IMG/VR virus record: IMGVR_UViG_3300021963_000021
Coordinates: 124,001-188,000 of that record
DNA length: 64,000 bases
Strand: one strand, 5' to 3'
Position 1 is the first letter of the stretch. Every line of letters begins with the position of its first letter. Positions 1 through 53,062 of the stretch are shown here, one piece after another. The translations under genes and the position numbers were made by a program. The notes under the pieces were generated by a model that saw nothing but the letters and a program-made list of their open reading frames with translations, did not search any database and was not told the DNA's origin.

Positions 1-3000
1 CTAGAAACGATTAAATCGTCAGTGGTTGACGGGTATACACCTGTTGGCCTATTCAGTTATGTTTTAGATTACATTAGATCTAATGCTGTTAACACAGAAT
101 CATTATATGATTTCTTTAGTAACTATAATGTTAAGTTGTCTAGTCGCATTGGCGGGTTTGTTGATAAATCACAACAGAAATATCTATTAGACAGCAAGAG
201 TCCGCAGAGTAAAACATCTGGAGTGTTTATTCCTCAAGAAGATTACGAGATATTTTTTAATGTAAGTTCACCATCTTCCGTGGTAACATATTCTGGTGTT
301 ATCATAGAAAAAGTTCCTACAGGATTTAAACTATCAGGGTATGATAAGCTAGATGCTAGTTTTGTATATTATGATTATTTTGCCAGATTAGATGACCCTG
401 CGATATCCGTTGGAGGCGTCAGCGAAAACTACTCTGATTGGACTACTGAAAAATTTTATAGCAAAGGGGCACTTGTAAAATACAATTCTAAATTTTACAG
501 AGTCTCTCAAACACATACTAGTGGTCAAACATTTGACAGTAATCAATTTGTTGAAATTTCTACACTTCCACTTGTAGGCGCTGTTACAGCAGTTAAGAGA
601 ACTTCTTTTGACAAGCAGACTGTGTTAACAACGCCCTATGGAACTGTTATTGAAAATATACAAGGGGTAGTCGATTTCTTGTTAGGCTATCAAGCATACA
701 TGAAAGATCAAGGACTTGTATTTGATGATTATAATACAGATCTACAAGTTTCAAACGATTGGGAAACCAGTTGTAAAGAATTCATGTTCTGGACAACCCA
801 TAACTGGGCCACTGGTGCTATCATATCGTTGAGCCCTGCTGCTCTAAAGATAAAAATAACAGCAGTTGGTAGCGTAGCAGATAACATATTAGATACATTC
901 TACGACTACTCCATATTCAAAGCCGACGGAACAAAGTTATCTCCAGATGAAGTTGATGTATATAGAACCTATAATGAAATTATACTAGCACCTAGTAGTG
1001 TGACTACTGGTATCTATTATGCTAAGATTAGTTTTGTCTTAAAAGAACATGTGGTACTATTCAACGACAGAACTATATTCAATGATGTTATCTATGACAA
1101 AGGTCCTGGTTATAGACAGGAAAGAATTAAAGTTCTAGGTTTTAGAACCAGCGACTGGGACGGTGATTATACAAGTCCGGGATTTATCTATGATGTTGCT
1201 GATATTAATCCTTGGGAAAAATATACTGATTACAGACTAGGCGACATTGTACAATTTAAACAATTTAATTACGTCAGCAAGTATTTCCAGAAAGGTACTG
1301 CTGAGTTTGATAGGGCTGGATGGGAAAAACTTGATTCAGAACCGACGTCTGGTTTAGTAGCAAACTTTGATTATAAAATTAATCAAATTGAAGATTTCTA
1401 CGAAGTTGATTATCAAGGTATCAATAACGAGCAAAAAGTAATGGCTCGACATTCTATTGGTTATCAGAAACGAGAATTTTTACAAGACATGGCAGAAGAT
1501 GAAGTCAGTCAGTTTAGACTTTATCAAGGCTACATCAAAGAAAAAGGCACATACAACGCCATAACTAAGGTGTTTGATAAACTTAGTAGAATCCCCGAAG
1601 ACTCTGTAGAGCTTAAAGAAGAGTGGGCATTCTTGTTAGGAAGCATGGGCGGCACAGAGCAGTATAATGAAATAGAATTTTCTTTGAAACAAAATGCTCT
1701 TAAATTAAATCCTCAACCAGTGCTTTTAAATGAAAGAAACACATCAAAATCTGAATATCAAAATTATATTATTGTAAAGCAGAACGATTATACTGTAGGC
1801 AATAACTCTTATAAATTCCCAGTCAAGGATTATCCTGTAGGCAATTGGACTGCTGGATATGTTTACGCAGATGATGTTGATTATGTAGTTTCTTCATTCG
1901 CAGACATTTATCTACAAGATGTGACCACCTATAAAAACGGTCAAACAACTTGGGTGACATTTACAGATACTGGGTGGAATGTTTTAAGATATAGAATCAG
2001 TAATGTAATAGTGGGAGCCGTTGCGGTTGTTGATACAACAACAGTTGTATTAGAAACTAACAGAGTACATGGAATTGAAGTTGGCACAGTTATTGGTCTA
2101 ACAAATATAAAAAATCTAACAGGATTTTATTATGTTAAAGCAGTGTCGCCGACAAAAATAATTATAGCCATTGATGGATACAAAGAAGAACCAGAAATCG
2201 ATGAAAGCTCTTTCTGCTACGTGGGATATTTTATTCCTGCTAGAGTACCAAATTCTAATCCATTAATCAGCGACGAATACGCTTCGTTGCCATTGGGCAC
2301 ACGCCTATGGTTGGATTCAGACGAAAACAATCGTTGGAATGTTATAGAAAGACAGAAGCAGTATAAGGTAACAGAAATTTCCGAATACGGTGTTTCGTTC
2401 CCAACAGGAACTGGTGCTGCGGTAGAGTATCTAGAAAAACGAAATGTAACTATTGTTTCAAACCCAGGTAGTTCAGTAACATCTGGAGATGCTACTAGAG
2501 AAGCTGCGGTGATTGTTTATTCACAGGGATCTGCTGGATTAACACCGTTACAGATATTAAATCCTCAAAGTGGATTACAAGACACATTCCTAGGAACATA
2601 TGGTGATATTCTAAAATCCAGTAAAGATGGCCGCTGGCTGTTGATTGGTTCACCAAATGTATCTTATGTTCCTTCTAACTTTAGAGAGTCCTATGATCCT
2701 CAGGCAAATTACAATCAAGGCGATACAGTAATATATGCTGGAAAACTTTGGACAGCAAAACGTCCTATATACAGTGACGGAAGTACTGCGGTATTTGATT
2801 ATGATGATTGGGAATTAGCAACAATACATGAAGCAAATCCTTTAGGAAAGAATATCTATGATATAAATCAAGGATATAGACAACAAGGATCAGTTGACGT
2901 ATACGAGTACGATCAGGGGCAATATGTATTTAGAAATAGTTTGATTAGTCCACGTCCGGGTCGAGGTGAACAGTTTGGTTCGTCAATTGCCATCGGTAAG

Positions 3001-6000
3001 AGAGAAGGAATCGAAGGCACCAGTGGTGACCTAGTGCTAACAGTCAACAGTATAGATAGTCTAGGCGGTATTGCTGAAGTTTCAGTAGAAGGCACCAGCG
3101 GTCTAGCAGATGCTGTATTCAGCAATATCAGCGGTATTGATGTTAGTTCTCCGGGCGAAAATGCTTCCTTTGACGTTTTTAGATTTGGTAACAATTATAC
3201 AGTTACAGTTCGTAATGGTGGTACAAGATATACAGTAGGCGACAGAATAAAAATTATCGGCAGCAGAGTAGGAGGAGTTACACCTTTTAATGATCTCTTA
3301 GTGGATGTTATTGCTGTAAATTCTCAGGGAGAAATTTTAGGTTCTGAAACATATACTAACCTATCTGGTATTAATTCAGTATTGCCGACAGTGGCAGCAG
3401 TGTTTAATATCAGCAAGGTAAGAAACGTCTATTCTGTAGAAGCAATAAACAACGGCCTCGGTTACATTCCGAGAAGTGTAGTAAGATATGCTTCAAAATT
3501 ATATGCCTGTATCAAAGACACAGGAATCGACAGAGGAGTCTACGCTGTCGAAAGTACATACACTCCTGGAGACATTGTCAAGTATCCAGCTAATTCCAGT
3601 GCTTATTATAAGTGTATTCGTTATCTAGTTGATAGTGAAGATCCAGAACTACGTGTAGGCATTACTGGAATTCAAACATCTGATACCTATTACTGGGAAC
3701 CAGCAGCAACTATATTCCCAACAAACACAGAATATTGGGAATTGGTTTCAGGCGGCGCATTTCCGCTTATAGCAACTAACTGGCAAGACAAAGACAATAG
3801 AGGTAATTTAATACACTATGTTGCTGGATCAACTATATTTGTTTCGGGAGATCAGCTAGGCGGTGTGTCACCTGACAATGACTTGATCATAAGAGTTAAC
3901 CAAATAGAAAATGGGGCAATAGCTGATTTTTCTTTCAAGGGAACAGCGTCAACTGGTATTATATGGACAGGAAGCGCAGCTTCGGGTGAAGCTACCTACA
4001 ACGACCTAGTTGGTGAAGACGTCAGTGCGCCTGGATCGGGAGCTATCTTTAACATAGCAAGAACTAACGGGATTTATTCTGCTATAGTTAATGTCAGTGG
4101 CACAAGATATACAGTAGGCGATCAGATAAAAATTCTAGGAACTTCGTTGGGTGGAGTTAAAGAAGCCTATTACATGATTATTGGAGCTCCAGGTTCTAGA
4201 GACGATCAAGGTAGAGCATACCTTTACATCTATGAAGGGTTTAAGTGGAAACATTTAGAAGACCTAACATTCCAGGGAGTCTTTAACCCGGCTAACAATT
4301 ACAATGAAAGTGACACTGTTTGGTATGATACTTCATACTGGAAAGCTACATCGGCCTGGGCCGGTGACGGATCAACTGTTCCTACAGCACCGGCATGGGA
4401 ACAAATAGTTTCGTTGAATACAGGAATACTGCCAAAAGCAGCAGCATTTACTGATGATGGCTCTACAATACAGTCTGGACTTGTTGCCGACGGCATAGAG
4501 TTTTTAAACATCGGTGATAGATATGCTCAAAGCATGGACACCAATCAAACAGCAACTGTGCTAGTAGTTGGTGCTCCACAGGCAGACGCTTCGGAGTTTG
4601 AAGACTATGCCGGTGTATGGAAATCATATCAAACCTATTACACAGGGCAGACAGTTAGAAGAAATACTTCTTATTACACCTGTTTAGTTGACGGTTCGAT
4701 CAGTGATATACCAGAATCCGAACCAGCTATCTGGGAACTAGAAACCGGAGTAAACCAGTCTAGGACTGGAGAAGTTTTTGTATACCAGAAAGATGATCAA
4801 GATGTATACCATCTATTACAAACGCTTTCTTCTAGCACAGTGTCTCAGATATCAGCAAATGAATCTGGCGATCAGTTTGGCCATAAAGTCCTATTGTCAA
4901 CAGACGGTACTACATTATACGTATCTGCTCCAAATGTTGATATGCTTGGTGCTGACCAAGGCGCAGTTTATGTGTTTAAATTTGATAACAATCAGTTTGT
5001 ATTTGATCAAAAAATACAAAGCGTTGTACAAGATGCCGGCGAACGTTTTGGTTCGACACTATCTGTATCACCAGATGGCTCAACATTGGCCATTGGTGCT
5101 GAAGGTGCTGAAACTTTCTCTAATACTACATTTGATGCTGGTAGTACAGCATTTGATAGATTCGTTACTAGATTTAAAGATCCTGAAGGAAAAACAGGAA
5201 AAGTATATGTTTACAATCAATATATAGGAAAATATATACTGGCTGAAATTTTTGAAGACGGTCTAACAACTAACGAAGACTTTGGTCGATCTATATCAGT
5301 ATCAAATAATTCGATCATTGTTGGTTCTCCAAATTATCTTTCAGATGATCCAGCGTTTGATCAAATTAGAATTGGTCGTATACAAAAATTCACCAAGGCT
5401 GAGGGCGTAAAATCTTGGGCAGTGATAAGAGAACAATCATCTGGCGTTGATGTTTCTAAGATAAAAAATCTGTCATTCTACAATGGTTTGACAAATATAA
5501 AAATAGCAGATGTAGATGTAGTTGATCCGTTCAACGGAAAAATATTATCTATAGTTGAGCAAGACATTGATTACAAAACATCTTATGATCCGGCAGTTTA
5601 TTCTGTAGGCACAGATACTGATACTGTGGACGAGAAACAACCTTGGTTGTCTAATATGGTAGGTGCTATATGGTGGGATACTTCAACAACTAAATGGACT
5701 GTGTATAATCAAAATGATACATCGTTTAGATTAGGCAATTGGTCTAAACTAGCGTATGGAAGCTCTGTTGATGTCTACGAGTGGGTAGAGTCTGAATATT
5801 CGCCTAGTGAATGGGCCGACCTAACAGGAACAGCAGAAGCGTTTAATGTTGGAATATCAGGAACACCTTTAGAAAATGCTCCTTATTCTAAGAAAGACTT
5901 TGTAGATACAATAACAGGAGTGGTCAATAAGACTTATTATTACTACTGGGTTAAAGACAAATCTACATTGCCGACAAACAGTAAGAAAACTAATCCAGCT

Positions 6001-45224: not shown

Positions 45225-47897
45225 TCACTCAAAATCAAACAATTTACTGAATGTGTTATCACTGCGTGTTGAACTAATGTCCCATTCCAACACTCCGATT
45301 AGGTTTTCTAACTTTTCATCGATAACTGTGGTTTCCATTTCGGCATCATCGAACGGTAGTTCTTTGAACCATTGCGGCAAACGTAGTTCGTCTACCGGAT
45401 ACGCTACTGAAGTATAGCCCATTGGGTTATCTCTGACTTTACAAACAATCACTTTAGCACCGTCAGTGATGCCCATTGAGTACTTGTCATCCATCATGCG
45501 TTTGAGAGTATTCCAATTAAGACTTGCTCTAACATGACCAGGCATGTTAGTCTTACCAGCCTTCTTCTCTTTTGCGGCGTATTCTGTAATGTTGTTGGCA
45601 CGTTTGGGAGAGCCTTTCTCCCAACCTGGGCGAGTTTTAAATTCTGTACGGAAATTAGTGATGTGTTCTAGTACTTCTTCTTTTGAAGCACCGGTTAGCA
45701 CTTTTTCTAATACATCACTTAAGAAGTTTTGAATGACTACTGGAGTATCACTGCGTTTAAGGTCTAGACCCATGGCCTTGATCTTACCAGGTTTACCATC
45801 TACATCACTGCGCTTGCCTTCTTTGTCATAGTAAAGCACAGCATAACGCTTCTTAGTAATGAACAGACCTTTTGACGCAACAATTTCACGACCTGCTTTA
45901 ATAACTTCGCCACGAGTCTTTGGACAATGGAACTGTTCTGTCATCATTTTAGGAAAACTCTGATTGACTTCGTCGGCTATTTGATCATACAACTGTACTA
46001 CAGTTTCTTTACTCCAAGGCAAGTGCCCAGATTCAATTTCTTTTCTCAGTACAGGGTATGCTGAAAAGTAGCAGGAGTCAGTATCACCATAGATAACAGC
46101 CTTGCCTTTGTAATCATATTCGCCACAAATGATTTCATTTATCTTTGAGGCCATGTGTTTGACAATAGTCCTGCCTGTGAGTGTAGTGGATTGACCGATT
46201 CTATTATCAAAGAAGCGGCAACCAGGATTAAGAATAGCGCCATAAAGACTATTGAGGTTAATTTTCTTAACAAGCTGTCGTTTGTCCCAGTATTCTTCTT
46301 CAATTTTATTTCCACTTGCTATACATTCCTTTAGTTTAGCTTGCATTTCTTTACGTTCAGCATACCAACGCTTTAGCAGTCCTGGAATAATACCATCTTT
46401 TTCATAGGTAAAGATAGTTCCGTTAGAACTGATCATCCAGGGCTGACCAGAATCAAATATGAGATCATTGATCTGTGCGCCAGTTAATGTATCACTGCCG
46501 CCATTTTCCCAGTCAATGACGATTTCTTTAGCAATGTTTCGTTCCATTACATACTCATACTCCAAGCTACCGAACATTCCTTCCCATGCTGCCGCAAAAG
46601 ATTTACCATGCCGCACCATTTGATCGTCAATATAGTTCTTTGTGTAGTCTGGACGAAGTTGACCGACAATGGTTTCCGGTCCCATGTTTAGCGCACGAAT
46701 CGCAGACGGATACAGTGAGTTCAAGTCAACTGATCCGATCCATTCGTGAATGCCTTTCTTGGGATAAGCAACATAAGCACCTGCTGCCTGTGTGGATTCT
46801 GTGTCGTCACGTCTCTTACGATTCGGTACAACAAAGCCTCTACGATGTGCTTCGTTGATAATTGCCTGCTCAGTAACAGCAACCGCACCCATCGCAGTCT
46901 GTAGTAACACAGTATTTTCGTGGGCAATCTTGTTAGCTAGATCCAAAAACTGTAGTTTCTTATCTAACTTGTCTAGCAGTGCTGTGTCTTGTCTGTTGTA
47001 TTCGATGAATTTTTTAAAGTCGTTGTTGTAAAGTTGATCCAGTGTACCTTCGTAGACTGTTTTGTTTTCACCGATCTCCATTTCACCAATAGCATCTAGT
47101 CGATATGTGTGTCGTTCTTCATATGTGTACTTTCTATAAAGTTCGAGACTATCAAGATGTACACGCCCTACTAGATCATATGTGACAGCCTGGCGACCAA
47201 ACTTTTCAAACTCACGTTTTTTAGGAAACTGATTCCATAAACAGAATCGACGTGTATCTTCTTTTGACAACGCTTTTGTTACACGGTTAACGGTGTATGG
47301 AATATCGAAACCTTCTGAATTCCAACCACTTAACACATCAGCATCTTCAATGAGTGTTAAGAAGTTGTCAAGAAGATCTGCTTCGTTGTCAAAAAGATAT
47401 GTGTTTGGAAATTCTGCTACTGCCTTTTCTGCTTCTGCCATTGACATAGTCTTTGGAGGTACAGCAAGACAGATTAATGTGTTAAGCCATTGTAAGTGAA
47501 CAGCAATCGCAGTGATCGGCATAAACGCATCATCTGGTGAAGCATACCCACGTTCGGGATCAAAGTCTACTTCAATGTCAAAGAATGCTACGTTTAGTTT
47601 TGGGGAATCTTGATTAAGATAGTTTTCTTCAAGACAACGGAATATAGGATTAATATCAGATTCATAAAGTTTCTGACTTCCGTGTATTTTTTGTTCTTTG
47701 TGGAATTCTTTTAGATTTTTACAAGTAACACGACTCAGCGGAATGCCGTGAGTACTAACATACTTGCCTTTAGGATCTTGATAATAAAAAAGATATTTGG
47801 CAGCATATTCTTTAAACTGTCTGCGACCATCTTTATCTCTTTCGACAACAGAGATAAGATCACTGTCTCTGTCGTAGTAAGCATCTACGTAACTCAT
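45225..47897 (-). CDS. Family B DNA polymerase (gp43-like); likely start MSYVDA at 47897
   Basis: Exo motifs FDIEVD, GWNSEGFDIPY, YNRQD; pol motifs SVDLNSLYPS, KINLNSLYG, YGDTDS, KKRYA; SD AAGGAG. Confidence 0.95.
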   Translation of the reverse strand: MSYVDAYYDRDSDLISVVERDKDGRRQFKEYAAKYLFYYQDPKGKYVSTHGIPLSRVTCKNLKEFHKEQKIHGSQKLYESDINPIFRCLEENYLNQDSPKLNVAFFDIEVDFDPERGYASPDDAFMPITAIAVHLQWLNTLICLAVPPKTMSMAEAEKAVAEFPNTYLFDNEADLLDNFLTLIEDADVLSGWNSEGFDIPYTVNRVTKALSKEDTRRFCLWNQFPKKREFEKFGRQAVTYDLVGRVHLDSLELYRKYTYEERHTYRLDAIGEMEIGENKTVYEGTLDQLYNNDFKKFIEYNRQDTALLDKLDKKLQFLDLANKIAHENTVLLQTAMGAVAVTEQAIINEAHRRGFVVPNRKRRDDTESTQAAGAYVAYPKKGIHEWIGSVDLNSLYPSAIRALNMGPETIVGQLRPDYTKNYIDDQMVRHGKSFAAAWEGMFGSLEYEYVMERNIAKEIVIDWENGGSDTLTGAQINDLIFDSGQPWMISSNGTIFTYEKDGIIPGLLKRWYAERKEMQAKLKECIASGNKIEEEYWDKRQLVKKINLNSLYGAILNPGCRFFDNRIGQSTTLTGRTIVKHMASKINEIICGEYDYKGKAVIYGDTDSCYFSAYPVLRKEIESGHLPWSKETVVQLYDQIADEVNQSFPKMMTEQFHCPKTRGEVIKAGREIVASKGLFITKKRYAVLYYDKEGKRSDVDGKPGKIKAMGLDLKRSDTPVVIQNFLSDVLEKVLTGASKEEVLEHITNFRTEFKTRPGWEKGSPKRANNITEYAAKEKKAGKTNMPGHVRASLNWNTLKRMMDDKYSMGITDGAKVIVCKVRDNPMGYTSVAYPVDELRLPQWFKELPFDDAEMETTVIDEKLENLIGVLEWDISSTRSDNTFSKLFDFE

Positions 47898-47907
47898 TTT
47901 TTTCTCC

Positions 47908-47954
47908 TTGCGATTTTTGGCTCGCAAATACCAAACTAGTCATTTATGGCTGAC
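47908..47954 (-). promoter_or_regulatory. Twin RNA hairpins with near-identical 8-nt loops abutting the polymerase RBS (putative translational operator)
   Basis: mRNA: GUCA-GCCAUAAA-UGAC ... UUGCGA-GCCAAAAA-UCGCAA-GGAG-A7-AUG. Confidence 0.65.
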
Positions 47955-47969
47955 GAGACCGTACTCATA

Positions 47970-48260
47970 TTAATTAATTAGCATTCTAACTAGGCCGAAT
48001 GTGTCAATTGCGGTTAGCAAGATGTAGTTAGCCAACATGCCAAACGATTTCCTAGTATAAGCAGCCCAAGCATACATAGCACAGCCGCTGATCCAAATAG
48101 GATATAACGCAAGTAACGGGGGATTCGGGACGGTGATTGCCATAGTAATACTACACCCAATACTAACAGCCCAGGCAAGCAGCTCAATAATAAAACGGAA
48201 AGGATGACTATTCCAATCATCACGGATCCAATCAAATGTTGGTTTGAATAGATCTATCAT
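47970..48260 (-). CDS. Small multi-pass membrane protein
   Basis: Three hydrophobic segments in 96 aa. Confidence 0.6.
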   Translation of the reverse strand: MIDLFKPTFDWIRDDWNSHPFRFIIELLAWAVSIGCSITMAITVPNPPLLALYPIWISGCAMYAWAAYTRKSFGMLANYILLTAIDTFGLVRMLIN

Positions 48261-48523
48261 TCAGAATCGGGCAAACGCTTAGTTACACCAAGAATCATTT
48301 CAATCTCGTCCCATTCTTCTTCGTGAGATTTCCAATTATCTTTGTGAGCAATCTTAATTGCTTTATTAATAATACTTGGTTTGATTTGTAGCTCTTCTGC
48401 TACTGCTTTGACAGTCTCTTTGAGACCTTCTTGTAGATCTTCTACTTCACGTAATACATTGCCGCCTTCGTTAATAAGGCGTTCTAATTTTGCTTTTTCT
48501 TCAGGACCATACATCTTTGCCAT
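48257..48523 (-). CDS. Small dsDNA-binding protein (T4 DsbA-like)
   Basis: 88-aa helical; LKETVKAVAEELQIKPSIINKAIKIAHK pattern; upstream TTGCTC-18-TATAAT and SD AGGAG. Confidence 0.5.
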   Translation of the reverse strand: MAKMYGPEEKAKLERLINEGGNVLREVEDLQEGLKETVKAVAEELQIKPSIINKAIKIAHKDNWKSHEEEWDEIEMILGVTKRLPDSE

Positions 48524-48580
48524 ATAATAAACTCCTTGTTACAGTCTATTATATATGACCTAGGCCCTGAAGAGCAAATA

Positions 48581-49198
48581 TTATCCTACCAAAATGTGTA
48601 GTGCGTGTTCGTAGTGTTTTTTACGATCTTCTAAACCAATAGTGCCACCGTTAATACGTTTGGTCATTGTTAGAATATCGCCAGAGTCGGCGAATTGATT
48701 TAAATTATTTGCTGCCCAAAACCAACCTGCTGAAAGAACTGCTCCCGGAGATGTCTCTAGTAATTCTGGTTCTTCAAGTAAGTCTGCTCCGAGTGCTTCA
48801 CCGCAGGCACGATAGTTATTTTTACCAGTGACTTGGATTAGCCCGCGACCGCGATATTTAAAACCTTCACCGCTGGCTTCGTCACCGTTGCCCATACGAT
48901 TAGCATACACTCTATTAGCAATCATTTGTGGCTTGCGTTCGTAGTGTGCTGCTGTGGCATCATCTGGGAAATATTTTGGGAATGTGCCTCTTAGTCCCTT
49001 TGCTCCATAGTTGAGATTCTCAACCATGAAATTAAAATTACCACTTTCATGAGCACACTGAGCAAGGAAAGCAGCTTGCCTTGCTGGTGTCATGATATCG
49101 AACAATTCAAATGTTTCTACAAAACCTTCATACAGTTCTGCTACTCTTTGCTTTTTAGCCTCAGGAAAGGCTTCTTGAATTTGTTCTAAAAGAATCAT
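48581..49198 (-). CDS. GH19 (chitinase-class) endolysin
   Basis: AAFLAQCAHES, ENLNY, YRGRGLIQVTGKNNY, SAGWFW, TKRINGG. Confidence 0.92.
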   Translation of the reverse strand: MILLEQIQEAFPEAKKQRVAELYEGFVETFELFDIMTPARQAAFLAQCAHESGNFNFMVENLNYGAKGLRGTFPKYFPDDATAAHYERKPQMIANRVYANRMGNGDEASGEGFKYRGRGLIQVTGKNNYRACGEALGADLLEEPELLETSPGAVLSAGWFWAANNLNQFADSGDILTMTKRINGGTIGLEDRKKHYEHALHILVG

Positions 49199-50642: not shown

Positions 50643-50824
50643 TTTATTTCTCTAATATTATTTACTAATGCGTCTTTACCGTACTGGGCTCTAAGTAGCC
50701 TTCTAGCCATTTCTTTATTTTTAGCAGTTACTGTAGTGTCGATCATTTGGCTATAGCCAGGCTGTTTTACTTTAACACGAGCACTCCAAAATTTAAAAGG
50801 AAATGTAACTTCTTCGGCTCTCAT
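50639..50824 (-). CDS. Hypothetical protein
   Basis: 61 aa, ATGA-coupled on both sides. Confidence 0.55.
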   Translation of the reverse strand: MRAEEVTFPFKFWSARVKVKQPGYSQMIDTTVTAKNKEMARRLLRAQYGKDALVNNIREIK

Positions 50825-52665
50825 TTCTTTTTACCCTGTCTCATATTTATTTGCCAATGTGCCAATTGTTTTTTACGAGGGCTAGCTGAATCGCTGCTGC
50901 GAATCTTTTTTAACTGAGCAATAGTCATGCCCTTTCTAATACCGTGACGTTTACTATCGCCTTTGTCTTGCGGGTTTTTACCATCAGCAAAATTTTCGTC
51001 TACATTATATGTTGGATCAGTCTTCTGCCGTTTCATTTTTTTAGGCTGCTTAGGATCTTTAGGGTCGATGTCTGTTGTAGTAAGTCCTGATTTTTCTAGA
51101 CCTTTGATATATTTGTGTTCTTCTTCTTCGCTGCCAAAGGAAAAAATTGTACTAGGAGGTCCCTTACCGAAGTCGTGTTTACCTAGACCTTTCATATTGC
51201 TTATGTGCTGTCCTAGTTTATACCAATCGTATACATCACTTACATCGACCCTAACTGTACCGGCTGGCATAGTAGGTTTAACTTCCGGGCCGCGCGGCTG
51301 TTCGTTTGGATGTTGGTCTTCATCTTGCTTGTTTATATCAAAGTCTGGCTCATCATCTTGGCCAAATATTTTTTCTAAGAATTCACCTACATACCAAAAC
51401 CAGTTTTTAAAATGCCCAGGATTAGTATCGTAATCCATGTGTGCTGAGTGCGATGCGGCATTATAAAGATTTTTTAGTTGAGGTTTAACACTGAACTCAC
51501 TCGCTACTCTAGTTAACTCTTTGCTAATCCTATTAGCACCTTCTTCGTCTTCATGTTGTTCTACACCGAAGCTGGCTTCTCTATAAGCACCTAATAACGC
51601 TCTACCAGCTTTAGGATCCATGCTTTGCCATGATGTTGATGCTTCTTGTATACTTTCGATAGCTGGTTTATCAAACAGGTTCGGGTATTTCTTATTGAAG
51701 TGTCTCATGATCACACCGCCTATAGCGTGTGCTTCATTCTCGTCACTGCTGCCGGTTTCGCCGCTGTTTTTGTTTAGTTGATGATGAGTTAGCTGTTTCC
51801 AATGTACTAGTTCATGGGCCAGGGTTCTCATAATATCTAATGGATGTCTGTTTTTAACTCCTACGTAGATAACTTTTTCATCATTTTCTAATTTGCCAAA
51901 TGTAGGTTGATCGGAGTTATCTATTTTTTTCAGTAGCACTATCTTAGGTAACTTCTTTATTCCTAACTGTTTCATAGCAATAGGAAAGAACTTTCTTAAA
52001 ACACTTTTTAGATCAGTATCGATATTTTCTTTAACTTCTTCGTCTTTGTCACCGCTAGAATGAACAGCAATCATCTTACCTCTATCTAAGCTCTGTAACT
52101 TTTGCGGTTCATGTTTTTCATCGCCTTGACCTACACGCCTGGCACGTTTAAAGCCGTCTAGAATTTTTTGTAGGCTGTCTTCGTCTGCTTGGTACTTGAT
52201 ACCAATACCGCCCGCAGCTTCCCAAGCAGTAATGTTGCTGCCTCTATCATCAATTAGTACGTTAGGCATGCCGTTGGCATTTTTAGCATACTTGGCTTTG
52301 TTAGAAACAATATAGATATTCTTTGGAGGTATGTTTAAATGTTTGTTGATCCAGACTTTTTTGTAGTGTGCGGATCCTTCATGATCACCACGCAACGGAC
52401 TAGAGCAGATGTTGTAACTGTCTGCGGCCTGTACTACCATTTGTAATAGTTTATCTGCTGTGGGGAACTTAGGCAATCGAGCAAAGAAATCTGTACCTAC
52501 CATTTTATTTAAAGTAGGGTCTGTTTTTGCTGGAGGAATATCTCTGTAGTTGCCGCTTTCAATACCGGCAAGTTTTGCGTACTCAGTAAAAAAGTCAGCG
52601 AGAACACCGTCCATGTCAACATAGACTTCCATTCCTTCTGGTAATTTTAAATCGTTAGCTTTCAT
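50821..52665 (-). CDS. Multidomain protein: HAD 5'-nucleotidase-like + HExxH metallopeptidase-like + basic modules (likely start 52665)
   Basis: VYVDMDGVLADF..LIDDRGSN..W..AGG; RTLAHELVHWKQ..ENEAHA. Confidence 0.75.
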   Translation of the reverse strand: MKANDLKLPEGMEVYVDMDGVLADFFTEYAKLAGIESGNYRDIPPAKTDPTLNKMVGTDFFARLPKFPTADKLLQMVVQAADSYNICSSPLRGDHEGSAHYKKVWINKHLNIPPKNIYIVSNKAKYAKNANGMPNVLIDDRGSNITAWEAAGGIGIKYQADEDSLQKILDGFKRARRVGQGDEKHEPQKLQSLDRGKMIAVHSSGDKDEEVKENIDTDLKSVLRKFFPIAMKQLGIKKLPKIVLLKKIDNSDQPTFGKLENDEKVIYVGVKNRHPLDIMRTLAHELVHWKQLTHHQLNKNSGETGSSDENEAHAIGGVIMRHFNKKYPNLFDKPAIESIQEASTSWQSMDPKAGRALLGAYREASFGVEQHEDEEGANRISKELTRVASEFSVKPQLKNLYNAASHSAHMDYDTNPGHFKNWFWYVGEFLEKIFGQDDEPDFDINKQDEDQHPNEQPRGPEVKPTMPAGTVRVDVSDVYDWYKLGQHISNMKGLGKHDFGKGPPSTIFSFGSEEEEHKYIKGLEKSGLTTTDIDPKDPKQPKKMKRQKTDPTYNVDENFADGKNPQDKGDSKRHGIRKGMTIAQLKKIRSSDSASPRKKQLAHWQINMRQGKKK

Positions 52666-52739
52666 TAATGTTGCCCGTATGGATTTAAAGGGCGATCTTC
52701 TTCGCCTTGTTGTTCTGGATAAACAGGATATTGGTTCAT
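52665..52739 (-). CDS. 24-aa micro-protein [24 protein letters not shown]
   Basis: Start overlaps the erpA stop (ATGA); stop overlaps the next start (TAATG). Confidence 0.55.
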
Positions 52740-53062
52740 ACTGAAAAACTACTCCCACAACCACATGTAGATTGAGCGTTAGGATTTTTAATCACAAACT
52801 GACTGCCTTGTAATTCTTCTTTGTAATCTATTTCGGCTTCGTTCATATAGGTCATGCTCATTGAATCAATCAACACAACATGCTTTTCATCTAACGGTAT
52901 TTCCCAATCATCTTCATTCTTTACTTCGTCAAATGTAAAACCATATTGGAAACCAGAACAGCCGCCACCTTGAACAAAGGTGCGTAGCATTAAGTTAGGA
53001 TTGTTTTCTTCTAATAGAAGATCAAGTATTTTTGCTTTTGCTGATGCTGTTATCTCAACCAT
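52736..53062 (-). CDS. erpA: A-type Fe-S cluster carrier (ErpA/IscA/HesB)
   Basis: [31 protein letters not shown]. Confidence 0.9.

What the first reader, a model, noticed from the sequence alone, without database searches (positions are those of the whole stretch)
47895..47960. Twin hairpins with matching 8-nt loops (GCCAUAAA / GCCAAAAA) at the DNA polymerase RBS
Seen in the mRNA: GUCA-GCCAUAAA-UGAC, then UAGUUUGGUAU, then UUGCGA-GCCAAAAA-UCGCAA running straight into SD GGAG and AUG. The linker UUUGGU can also pair with a loop GCCAAA (pseudoknot or alternative fold). Known: T4 gp43 represses its own translation by binding a short stem with an 8-nt loop just upstream of its SD. Inference: this is a duplicated, possibly switchable, autogenous operator with a different loop sequence.
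Basis: partly seen in the sequence, partly recalled or inferred. Interest (0 to 1): 0.7.

Follow-up and report, generated by a model that had tools for sequence, protein, structure and literature searches.

The report
Twin pseudoknot leader of phage polymerase
Just before the ribosome-binding site of a giant freshwater phage's DNA polymerase gene lie two near-identical small RNA pseudoknots, kept by evolution in every relative examined; they are most likely a switch that controls how much polymerase is made, possibly by binding the polymerase itself.

Summary
The polymerase mRNA (minus strand, 47960-47895) carries two hairpins with 8-nt loops GCCAUAAA and GCCAAAAA, then the SD GGAG and AUG.

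- **Conservation:** 318 related IMG/VR loci, anchored on the polymerase gene, gave 199 distinct leaders. All carry both units.
- **Stems:** both covary heavily. Hairpin 2 is 98-100% paired, with about 30 independent pair switches on the polymerase tree. Hairpin 1 has 41 stem versions.
- **Pseudoknot:** the loop's invariant GCC pairs with a conserved GGY 6-8 nt upstream. At unit 1, GGU:GCC changed to AGU:GCU five times independently with no half-changed intermediates (AU test p=3e-5). Each "hairpin" is therefore a small H-type pseudoknot.
- **Specificity:** the element occurs once in the 364-kb genome, always at the head of the polymerase translation unit. It is absent from polymerases at or below 57% identity, from T4 and RB49, and from Rfam.

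Best reading: a new, clade-specific translational operator, most plausibly autogenous as with T4 gp43. Binding is untested. A tandem riboswitch, another protein or a stability element remain possible.

The parts
47958..47960 (-). Unit 1, pseudoknot stem S1, 5' strand (GGU). Pairs with GCC at 47948-47950.
   Evidence: A5 columns 17-19 with 27-29 are 98.3% paired. G:C 131, A:U 5, U:G 122, C:G 13; the rest are misaligned rows. AGU:GCU arose 5 times on the ML tree, and one clade is rejected at p-AU 2.7e-5.
47955..47957 (-). Unit 1 loop L1 (CUC), variable in sequence
   Evidence: The distance from GGY to the loop's first G is 6-7 nt in all 139 leaders.
47939..47954 (-). Unit 1 hairpin: GUCA / loop GCCAUAAA (47943-47950) / UGAC
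   Evidence: There are 41 distinct stem versions. 128 of 139 have at least 4 bp, and 10 more reach 4 bp with a 1-nt bulge; arm-swap control averages 50.6 of 139. Loop consensus is G C C A Y A A N. The closing pair switches 17 times on the tree.
47933..47938 (-). Inter-unit linker (UAGUUU), variable in length and sequence
Evidence: Alignments A2 and A5.
47930..47932 (-). Unit 2, pseudoknot stem S1, 5' strand (GGU). Proposed to pair with GCC at 47919-47921.
   Evidence: 100% paired in A2. In A5: U:G 113, U:A 5, C:G 2; the 'unpaired' cells belong to a sub-clade whose GGU is aligned 3-5 columns further 3'. Only one-sided changes are seen, so unit 2 is supported by analogy with unit 1.
47908..47929 (-). 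Unit 2: L1 (AU) and hairpin UUGCGA / loop GCCAAAAA (47914-47921) / UCGCAA
   Evidence: Stem is 100% paired in A2 and 98.4% in A5, and all 5 pairs show double-sided changes. The two central pairs each switch 31-32 times on the polymerase tree, in step with their single columns. Loop consensus is G C C N N A A R.
47904..47907 (-). Shine-Dalgarno GGAG, directly after unit 2
   Evidence: GGAG is present in 133 of 139 leaders. It starts 1-3 nt after the fifth base pair of unit 2 in 120 of 139.
47895..47897 (-). Start codon AUG of the polymerase
   Evidence: Among 199 distinct relatives, 158 use ATG and 32 use TTG.
45225..47897 (-). Family-B (T4 gp43-like) DNA polymerase gene, 890 aa: the gene the element controls
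   Evidence: Pfam. tblastn against phages: best isolates Phosso 49.6%, Atu_ph07 46.6%, 121Q group 44%.
47970..48260 (-). Upstream ORF (96 aa, no family match). Its stop codon lies 9 nt before the first GGU. It is context, not part of the element.
   Evidence: In some relatives this ORF is missing and the element follows the DsbA-like gene directly.

Best explanation
The 66-nt stretch is a cis-acting regulatory leader of the polymerase mRNA, made of two tandem copies of one small H-type pseudoknot. Each copy runs GGY, 1-3 nt, a 4-6 bp stem, a loop that opens with GCC (paired back to the GGY) and continues N-N-A-A-N, then the second stem strand. Unit 2 ends 0-3 nt before the SD. The most likely mechanism is translational repression. 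A protein recognises the folded units, and when it sits on unit 2 it blocks the 30S subunit from the adjacent SD and start codon. The most likely binder is the DNA polymerase itself when it is not engaged on DNA, as with gp43 of T4, RB69 and RB49. The two units would give two-site, possibly cooperative, binding. Shown here: the fold, its conservation, its uniqueness to this gene and its position against the SD. Inferred: that it represses translation, and which molecule binds.
For: Structure: both stems and the unit-1 loop-to-flank pairing are supported by many independent compensatory changes. G:U pairs alternating with G:C or A:U place the structure on the sense RNA. Dedication to the polymerase: model R1 hits the genome once (70.9 bits; next best 11.2). 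A strict single-unit scan gives 9 hits against 6.3 expected, and only the two leader units have good stems and an SD. All 199 distinct polymerase-anchored leaders have the element. A motif-first scan of IMG/VR gave 117 loci, and in all of them the element heads the polymerase translation unit. In 112 it sits directly before the polymerase. In 4 an inserted ORF follows whose stop overlaps, or lies 12 nt before, the polymerase start. One locus (L342) is a recent disruption. Position: GGAG lies 1-3 nt after unit 2 in 120 of 139 leaders, and 16% of distinct leaders use the weak start UUG, as expected for a tightly limited gene. Precedent: T4, RB69 and RB49 gp43 repress their own translation through a leader hairpin at the RBS. 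Their loops contain UAAC or UAAA, and the 3' AC/AA bases are the key ones (PMC3014915; T4 and RB49 leaders read). Here AA at loop positions 6-7 is invariant and unit 1 reads A-UAA-A. Small pseudoknots are also known high-affinity ligands of a polymerase's template-primer cleft (HIV-1 RT aptamers, PMC2588506).
Against: The RNA is not a detectable homologue of the T4 or RB49 operators. It differs from them in having two units and a pseudoknot, whereas the review states there is no evidence of a pseudoknot in T4. Some T4-related polymerases do not autoregulate (PMC3014915). Nearly all conserved bases (GG:CC, and AA in the loop crossing that short helix) can be explained by the fold alone, so little sequence is left to point to a particular binder. 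In four lineages a gene sits between the element and the polymerase, so control of the polymerase there would depend on translational coupling. In L342 the element is cut off from the polymerase altogether.
Confidence: 0.42

Rival explanations
1. Tandem riboswitch: each mini-pseudoknot is an aptamer for a small molecule (for example a nucleotide or a DNA-precursor-related metabolite). Ligand-stabilised folding of unit 2 next to the SD tunes polymerase translation.
For: The size and topology match the smallest known pseudoknot aptamers: an H-type fold with an A-rich third loop, about 25 nt. Tandem aptamers and twin-hairpin riboswitches exist (established knowledge of preQ1-I, SAM-II and guanidine-II). 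The element is gene-specific and sits against the SD. A 3-bp helix is marginal alone and might need a ligand.
Against: No Rfam family matches, even at E<=10. The SD is not part of any conserved pairing, and no conserved alternative fold was found. No unpaired junction bases are conserved beyond those the fold itself explains. A DNA polymerase gene suggests no obvious metabolite, and the element precedes no metabolic gene anywhere in the genome.
Confidence: 0.15
2. Operator for a different RNA-binding protein (a phage regulator or a host protein), perhaps a dimer that contacts both matching units. The thrS operator, where dimeric ThrRS binds two similar stem-loops, is the model.
For: Two near-identical units suggest a symmetric or two-site binder. 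The position at the SD fits repression.
Against: A general regulator should have several targets, yet the element and its single unit occur only at the polymerase gene. No RegA-like or other RNA-binding family was found among the flanking genes (Pfam and PHROGs).
Confidence: 0.15
3. A ligand-independent structural leader: a folded 5' element that protects the polymerase mRNA from nucleases, directs processing, or holds the SD in an exposed context (an enhancer rather than a repressor).
For: The element always sits at the head of the translation unit, even when another ORF is inserted before the polymerase. In several relatives a TATAAATA box lies 8-15 nt upstream, so the RNA could begin just before unit 1.
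Against: Generic stabilisers do not need invariant loop bases, two matching units or a fixed 1-3 nt distance to the SD. The window itself has no TATAAATA and no promoter-like site upstream. Metatranscriptome contigs run through the leader into the upstream gene.
Confidence: 0.15
4. Chance inverted repeats, or a DNA-level site (promoter, terminator or protein-binding DNA).
For: The single-sequence fold is not significant (z -1.09), and the loop word is not enriched.
Against: Covariation is massive and includes G:U pairs that would be A:C on the other strand. No U-run follows, and no terminator-like or promoter-like site is called on this strand.
Confidence: 0.02

Closest known systems
Autogenous translational operator of T4, RB69 and RB49 DNA polymerase (gene 43)
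   Same: It lies in the 5' leader of a gp43-type family-B polymerase gene, at or against the RBS. It has a short stem (4-6 bp) with an 8-nt loop as in T4 (AGCCU / AAUAACUC / GGGCU). The loop carries an A-UAA-A core like the UAAC of T4 and RB69 and the UAAA of RB49 (PMC3014915). It is specific to one gene.
   Different: There are two units rather than one. The first three loop bases are paired to an upstream GGY to form a pseudoknot, whereas none is known for T4. The SD is 0-3 nt from the structure (7 nt in T4; overlapped by the stem in RB49). No sequence or structure homology is detectable. Binding by the polymerase is untested.
T4/RB69 gene 32 (SSB) operator pseudoknot
   Same: A pseudoknot in the leader of a phage replication gene that is autoregulated at translation (PMC535899).
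   Different: Gene 32 has a single pseudoknot far upstream, followed by more than 40 nt of unstructured UUAAA repeats over which gp32 spreads cooperatively. Here two pseudoknots abut the SD and there is no A/U repeat tract.
Pseudoknot RNA aptamers of HIV-1 reverse transcriptase
   Same: They are small H-type pseudoknots bound with nanomolar affinity in a polymerase's template-primer cleft (PMC2588506). From my memory of Tuerk et al. 1992 (not checked here), they also have a conserved G/C-rich first stem, a variable second stem and an A-rich loop between them, which is the conservation pattern seen here.
   Different: They are artificial ligands for an unrelated polymerase family and have no regulatory role. 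The resemblance concerns fold and plausibility, not ancestry.
E. coli thrS operator (two anticodon-like stem-loops bound by dimeric ThrRS); knowledge-based comparison
   Same: Two hairpins with matching loops lie just upstream of the SD of the regulated gene, and repression works by competition with the ribosome.
   Different: The thrS loops mimic a tRNA anticodon arm. No pseudoknot is involved, and the binder is a known dimer.
Small pseudoknot and twin-hairpin riboswitches (preQ1-I, SAM-II, guanidine-II/mini-ykkC); knowledge-based comparison
   Same: Very small size, H-type topology with an A-rich loop, tandem or twin arrangement, and a location next to the SD.
   Different: No Rfam match. 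The SD is not sequestered in the fold. The gene context is a polymerase rather than a metabolic or transport gene.

Membership tests
T4/RB69-type gp43 translational operator | Located in the 5' leader of the gene-43-type polymerase, at or overlapping the ribosome-binding site | tested here: met
   The element spans 47960-47908. SD is at 47907-47904 and AUG at 47897 of a DNA_pol_B gene. The SD lies 1-3 nt from unit 2 in 120 of 139 relatives.
T4/RB69-type gp43 translational operator | One hairpin of 16-18 nt (5-bp stem and 8-nt loop in T4) with no pseudoknot | tested here: not met
   There are two units. The unit-1 loop GCC pairs with the upstream GGY, backed by five independent compensatory changes. 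T4 has a single hairpin, and the review states there is no evidence for a pseudoknot (PMC3014915).
T4/RB69-type gp43 translational operator | Loop core UAAC/UAAA with functionally critical 3' AC or AA | tested here: inconclusive
   AA at loop positions 6-7 is present in 171-174 of 174 parsed 8-nt loops of unit 1 and 180 of 180 of unit 2. Unit 1 reads GCC-A-Y-A-A-N, most often AUAAA. The register in the loop differs from T4, and the AA can also be explained by the pseudoknot fold.
T4/RB69-type gp43 translational operator | Sequence/structure homology to the known operators | tested here: not met
   Covariance model R1 finds nothing at the T4 or RB49 gene 43 leaders; the best hit is 7.7 bits elsewhere. 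It also finds nothing in Phosso, Atu_ph07, 121Q or Vibrio phage 2.275.O, nor in polymerase clusters at 49-54% identity.
T4/RB69-type gp43 translational operator | Specific binding by the cognate polymerase and repression of its translation | not testable with these tools
   The complex-prediction job with polymerase plus leader RNA was not folded, and by the tool's own statement it is no evidence either way.
H-type RNA pseudoknot (structural class) | Hairpin-loop bases pair with a flanking single strand, shown by covariation | tested here: met
   Unit 1: G:C to A:U at columns 17/29 in 5 of 139 leaders, plus L414, with no half-changed intermediates. Five changes are needed on the ML tree, and one clade is rejected (p-AU 2.7e-5). 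U:G to C:G occurs with 13 changes on the tree. Unit 2 shows only one-sided changes that keep pairing (U:G to U:A 5, C:G 2), so it is supported by analogy.
Any Rfam 15 family, including riboswitch classes | Match to a curated covariance model | tested here: not met
   cmscan of 47000-49000 at E<=10 gives four chance-level hits of 12-17 bits. None lies on the leader and none is near its gathering score.
T4 gene 32-type operator | A single 5' pseudoknot followed by a long unstructured UUAAA/UAAA tract reaching the RBS | tested here: not met
   Two pseudoknots, the second within 0-3 nt of the SD, and no repeat tract. Definition taken from PMC535899.
Intrinsic terminator / attenuator | A G+C-rich hairpin followed by a U-run | tested here: not met
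   No terminator-like site is called on the minus strand in 47700-48700. Unit 2 is followed by GGAGAAAAAAA.

The most novel reading that the evidence does not exclude
The twin mini-pseudoknots are a new tandem riboswitch class that reads a small molecule tied to DNA synthesis (for example a nucleotide or dNTP-pool signal) and sets the level of the replicative polymerase in a large clade of uncultivated freshwater jumbo phages. A weaker form of this reading: they are natural polymerase-cleft aptamers that titrate idle polymerase.
Probability: 0.13. Interest if true: 0.85.

Novelty: new variant of a known kind. Interest (0 to 1): 0.62.

Why it matters
Autogenous control of a replicative DNA polymerase through its own mRNA is a classic result, but it is known from only a handful of T4-type phages and no RNA-protein structure has been solved. 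This element provides hundreds of natural sequence variants of a compact RNA with a clearly defined fold at the same regulatory position, in a very abundant group of uncultivated jumbo phages. If the polymerase binds it, three things follow. It would be a second, independently evolved solution to the same control problem. It would be a natural counterpart of the SELEX result that polymerases favour small pseudoknots. And it would be an easy target for structural work: about 25 nt per unit, with known covariation to guide mutants. If a small molecule binds instead, it would be among the smallest riboswitches known and the first to govern a DNA polymerase. Either way it is a well-supported RNA motif that is absent from Rfam.

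Tried and rejected
1. Single-sequence folding: not significant, so all weight rests on the comparative data.
2. Dispersed repeat or regulon: rejected. Loop word count, hairpin scan, model R1 on the whole genome and a strict single-unit scan (9 hits against 6.3 expected) all agree. A relaxed unit scan (66 against 46.9) was too permissive to use.
4. An alternative AUUU:AAAU hairpin as a switch: no better than shuffles.
5. Linker GGU pairing with loop 1: no covariation.
6. megablast against isolated phages: no match. The closest isolates lack the element.
7. Polymerase clusters at 49-57% identity: four leaders were read and none has the element. DNA for P0002 could not be fetched, and L446 has only 31 nt upstream.
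8. Complex prediction with polymerase plus RNA: not folded, so no evidence.
9. Sequencing runs: three metatranscriptomes hold the region, but only as contigs that run across the leader and both genes, so no 5' end can be read. One X15 contig ends at 47967, which I do not count as evidence.
10. Sigma-70 promoter and terminator scan: nothing on the gene's strand near the leader. TATAAATA is absent from the window.
11. The model-based alignment A4 kept the MAFFT register and did not resolve hairpin 1 bulges, so hairpin 1 was analysed with my own loop-anchored script. My first greedy unit parser mis-registered some units and was dropped.
12. The primary papers by Petrov & Karam 2002 and Tuerk et al. 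1992 are not held. Statements about them come from the review PMC3014915 or are marked as memory.
Full report
**What is there.** The window is part of a 363,943-bp IMG/VR virus record. On the minus strand, an 890-aa family-B DNA polymerase gene runs from 47897 to 45225. Its closest isolated relatives are jumbo phages at only 44-50% identity: Phosso, Atu_ph07 and the 121Q/Rak2 group. In order: GGU CUC, then GUCA-GCCAUAAA-UGAC, then UAGUUU GGU AU, then UUGCGA-GCCAAAAA-UCGCAA, then GGAG, seven A's and AUG.

**Is it more than chance?** Not on the evidence of one sequence. The leader's folding energy is ordinary (z = -1.09). The loop word is not enriched. Hairpins with a GCCNNAAN loop are as common in the genome as in shuffles (12 against 11.1). 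The case rests on relatives.

- Four polymerase-anchored scans of IMG/VR returned 318 loci with an intact leader and 199 distinct leader sequences.
- All 199 carry both units. The 12 that my script failed to parse are visibly bulged versions.
- RNAalifold, run without any prior, recovered the hairpin 2 stem and the GGU:GCC pairing.

**Stems.**

- Hairpin 2 is 100% paired in the first 57 leaders and 98.4% in 139, and every one of its five pairs shows double-sided changes. For the whole tested structure, 96% of cells are paired, against 85-87% in shuffles and 13-47% with slid partners.
- On a polymerase tree, the two central pairs of hairpin 2 each change identity 31-32 times. That equals the count for either column alone (30-31), so the two sides change on the same branches.
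- Hairpin 1 comes in 41 stem versions, for example GCGG/CCGC, GCG(a)G/CCGC, GAUCA/UGAUC, AACCA/UGGUU, GCAG/CUGC and GUCC/GGAC. 128 of 139 have at least 4 bp, and 10 more reach 4 bp with a one-base bulge. When 5' and 3' arms are swapped among sequences, the figure falls to 50.6 of 139.
- G:U pairs that alternate with G:C and A:U place the structure on the sense RNA.

**Each hairpin is a pseudoknot.** The loops are not free. Their first three bases (GCC) and a GGY triplet 6-7 nt (unit 1) or mostly 8 nt (unit 2) upstream of the loop are almost invariant.

- At unit 1, all five of the 139 leaders with a GCU loop have AGU upstream, and a sixth case (L414) appeared later. No leader has only one of the two changes.
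- On a FastTree of 138 polymerases this state needs 4 changes. On an IQ-TREE of 59 rows that includes all six cases it needs 5. The tree that forces them into one clade is 982 log-likelihood units worse (p-AU 2.7e-5).
- The third pair switches U:G to C:G, with 13 changes on the tree, and U:G to U:A where the loop begins with A.
- Two caveats apply. The group was named after a first tree had been seen. Exchange of leaders by recombination could also inflate the event counts. Neither can produce the strict co-occurrence.
- The linker GGU does not follow loop 1's changes, so each GGY pairs with the loop 3' of it.
- The unit is therefore S1 (GGY:GCC, 3 bp), L1 (1-3 nt), S2 (4-6 bp), no L2, and L3 (N-N-A-A-N). 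This is a classical H-type pseudoknot of about 25 nt.
- For unit 2 the same pairing is 100% compatible but is backed only by one-sided changes.
- The invariant AA in L3 is what one expects for bases lying in the minor groove of a short G:C helix. That last point is inference from known pseudoknots.

The 6-bp UUUGGU:GCCAAA helix exists in the window, but its UUU:AAA part is unpaired in 62-68% of the 139 relatives and scores below shuffles. A competing hairpin built from the conserved AUUU and AAAU is 80.0% paired against 78.8% in shuffles. A structural switch therefore has no comparative support.

**Where it occurs.**

- The covariance model built from the leaders (R1) hits the 364-kb genome once, at 70.9 bits, with the next hit at 11.2 bits.
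- A strict scan for single units finds 9 against 6.3 expected. Only the two leader units have solid stems and an SD. So this is not the site of a general regulator.
- A motif-first scan of IMG/VR, which does not select on the polymerase, gave 117 new loci. In 112 of them the polymerase (MSYVD or MSFVD) follows directly.
- In L266, L267 and L282 a 57-63-aa Cys-rich ORF follows, and its stop overlaps the polymerase start. In L336 a 204-aa ORF follows, with the polymerase UUG start 12 nt after its stop. In these four the element still heads the polymerase translation unit.
- In L342 a homing-endonuclease-like gene on the opposite strand has inserted right after the element's SD and AUG, and the polymerase has its own new SD 800 nt downstream.
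- Outside the clade the element is absent: Phosso, Atu_ph07, 121Q and Vibrio phage 2.275.O; four polymerase clusters at 49-54% identity; T4 and RB49; and Rfam.

**How it most likely works.**

- Unit 2 ends 1-3 nt before GGAG in 120 of 139 leaders, and GGAG is present in 133 of 139. One in six distinct leaders uses a UUG start.
- A folded, ligand-bound unit 2 would sit within the 30S binding site.
- The T4 family supplies the precedent. gp43 represses its own translation by binding a leader hairpin plus the RBS, and RNA and DNA binding are mutually exclusive. The loops carry UAAC (T4, RB69) or UAAA (RB49), and the 3' AC/AA bases are critical (PMC3014915, PMC535899).
- I read the T4 operator (AGCCU-AAUAACUC-GGGCU, 7 nt from the SD) and the RB49 one (CUUUC-GUAAAU-GAAGG, overlapping the SD) directly. 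The three known operators already differ greatly from one another. The present element shares with them the gene, the position, the short stem, the 8-nt loop and an A-UAA-A core. It adds a second unit and the pseudoknot.
- Polymerases can bind small pseudoknots tightly in their template-primer cleft, as the HIV-1 RT aptamers show (PMC2588506).
- I therefore rank an autogenous, polymerase-bound translational operator first, at 0.42. Repression and the identity of the binder are inferred, not shown.

**Rivals.**

- A tandem riboswitch (0.15) fits the size, the topology and the gene specificity. It lacks an Rfam match, a sequestered SD, an alternative fold and a sensible metabolite context.
- Another RNA-binding protein (0.15) would explain two matching sites, but it should have more targets than one.
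- A ligand-free stabilising or enhancing leader (0.15) fits the position at the head of the unit. It also fits the TATAAATA box just upstream in some relatives. It does not explain invariant loop bases, duplication or the fixed distance to the SD, and the window has no such box.
- Chance or a DNA-level site is excluded by the covariation.

**Novelty and verdict.** The kind of element is known: a leader RNA controlling a phage replication gene at the RBS. This architecture, twin H-type pseudoknots with GGY:GCC and an N-N-A-A-N loop, is not in Rfam. I found no description of it. I call it a new variant of a known kind. It is very well supported as a functional RNA (above 0.95), with its mechanism still open. 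Interest 0.62.

Noticed in passing
whole genome G000; window 1-64000: TATAAATA, the T4 late-promoter box, is strongly avoided. There are 0 copies in the window against 6.9 expected, and 12 genome-wide against 42.5 in shuffles. 10 of the 12 are on the minus strand, and several sit shortly before a start codon. This suggests a T4-like late promoter signal. In several relatives (L017, L020, L029, L032) a copy lies 8-15 nt upstream of the element, overlapping the stop codon of the upstream ORF.
   Followed up: partly
L342:134-1000: A 247-aa gene on the opposite strand (DUF723 plus a treble-clef zinc finger, homing-endonuclease-like) has inserted directly after the element's SD and AUG. The polymerase starts 800 nt downstream with a new SD. 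This is a natural uncoupling of the element from the polymerase.
   Followed up: partly
L267:2042-2227(-), also L266 and L282: A 57-63-aa Cys-rich ORF (MEEF.ICTECIRPE.C..RCEC...), with no family match, sits between the element and the polymerase. Its stop overlaps the polymerase start, so the two are translationally coupled.
   Followed up: partly
L336:2817-3431(-): A 204-aa ORF with no Pfam match is inserted between the element and the polymerase. The polymerase starts with UUG 12 nt after its stop.
   Followed up: no
polymerase start codons in relatives (window 47895-47897): 32 of 199 distinct leaders start the polymerase with UUG rather than AUG. That is unusually frequent for one gene family.
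   Followed up: partly
window 48006-48172: Summed contig depth jumps to 1356 in DNA run X1 (about 40-60 elsewhere) and to 120 in RNA-library run X3, and many contigs break here. It looks like a stretch of the 96-aa upstream ORF that many co-occurring strains share or that varies between them.
   Followed up: no
window 48257-48523(-), 48581-49198(-), 50821-52764(-): Neighbouring genes: a T4 DsbA-like transcriptional regulator, a protein with a chitinase class I / lysozyme-like domain, and a 647-aa protein with a 5'-3' deoxyribonucleotidase domain. No RegA-like repressor lies near the polymerase, unlike in T4. The window has no tRNA genes.
   Followed up: partly
L085 (Atu_ph07, MF403008.1 211877-214846): The polymerase of Agrobacterium phage Atu_ph07 is annotated as two adjacent CDS (601-2298 and 2317-3570 in the locus), meaning it is split or interrupted.
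   Followed up: no
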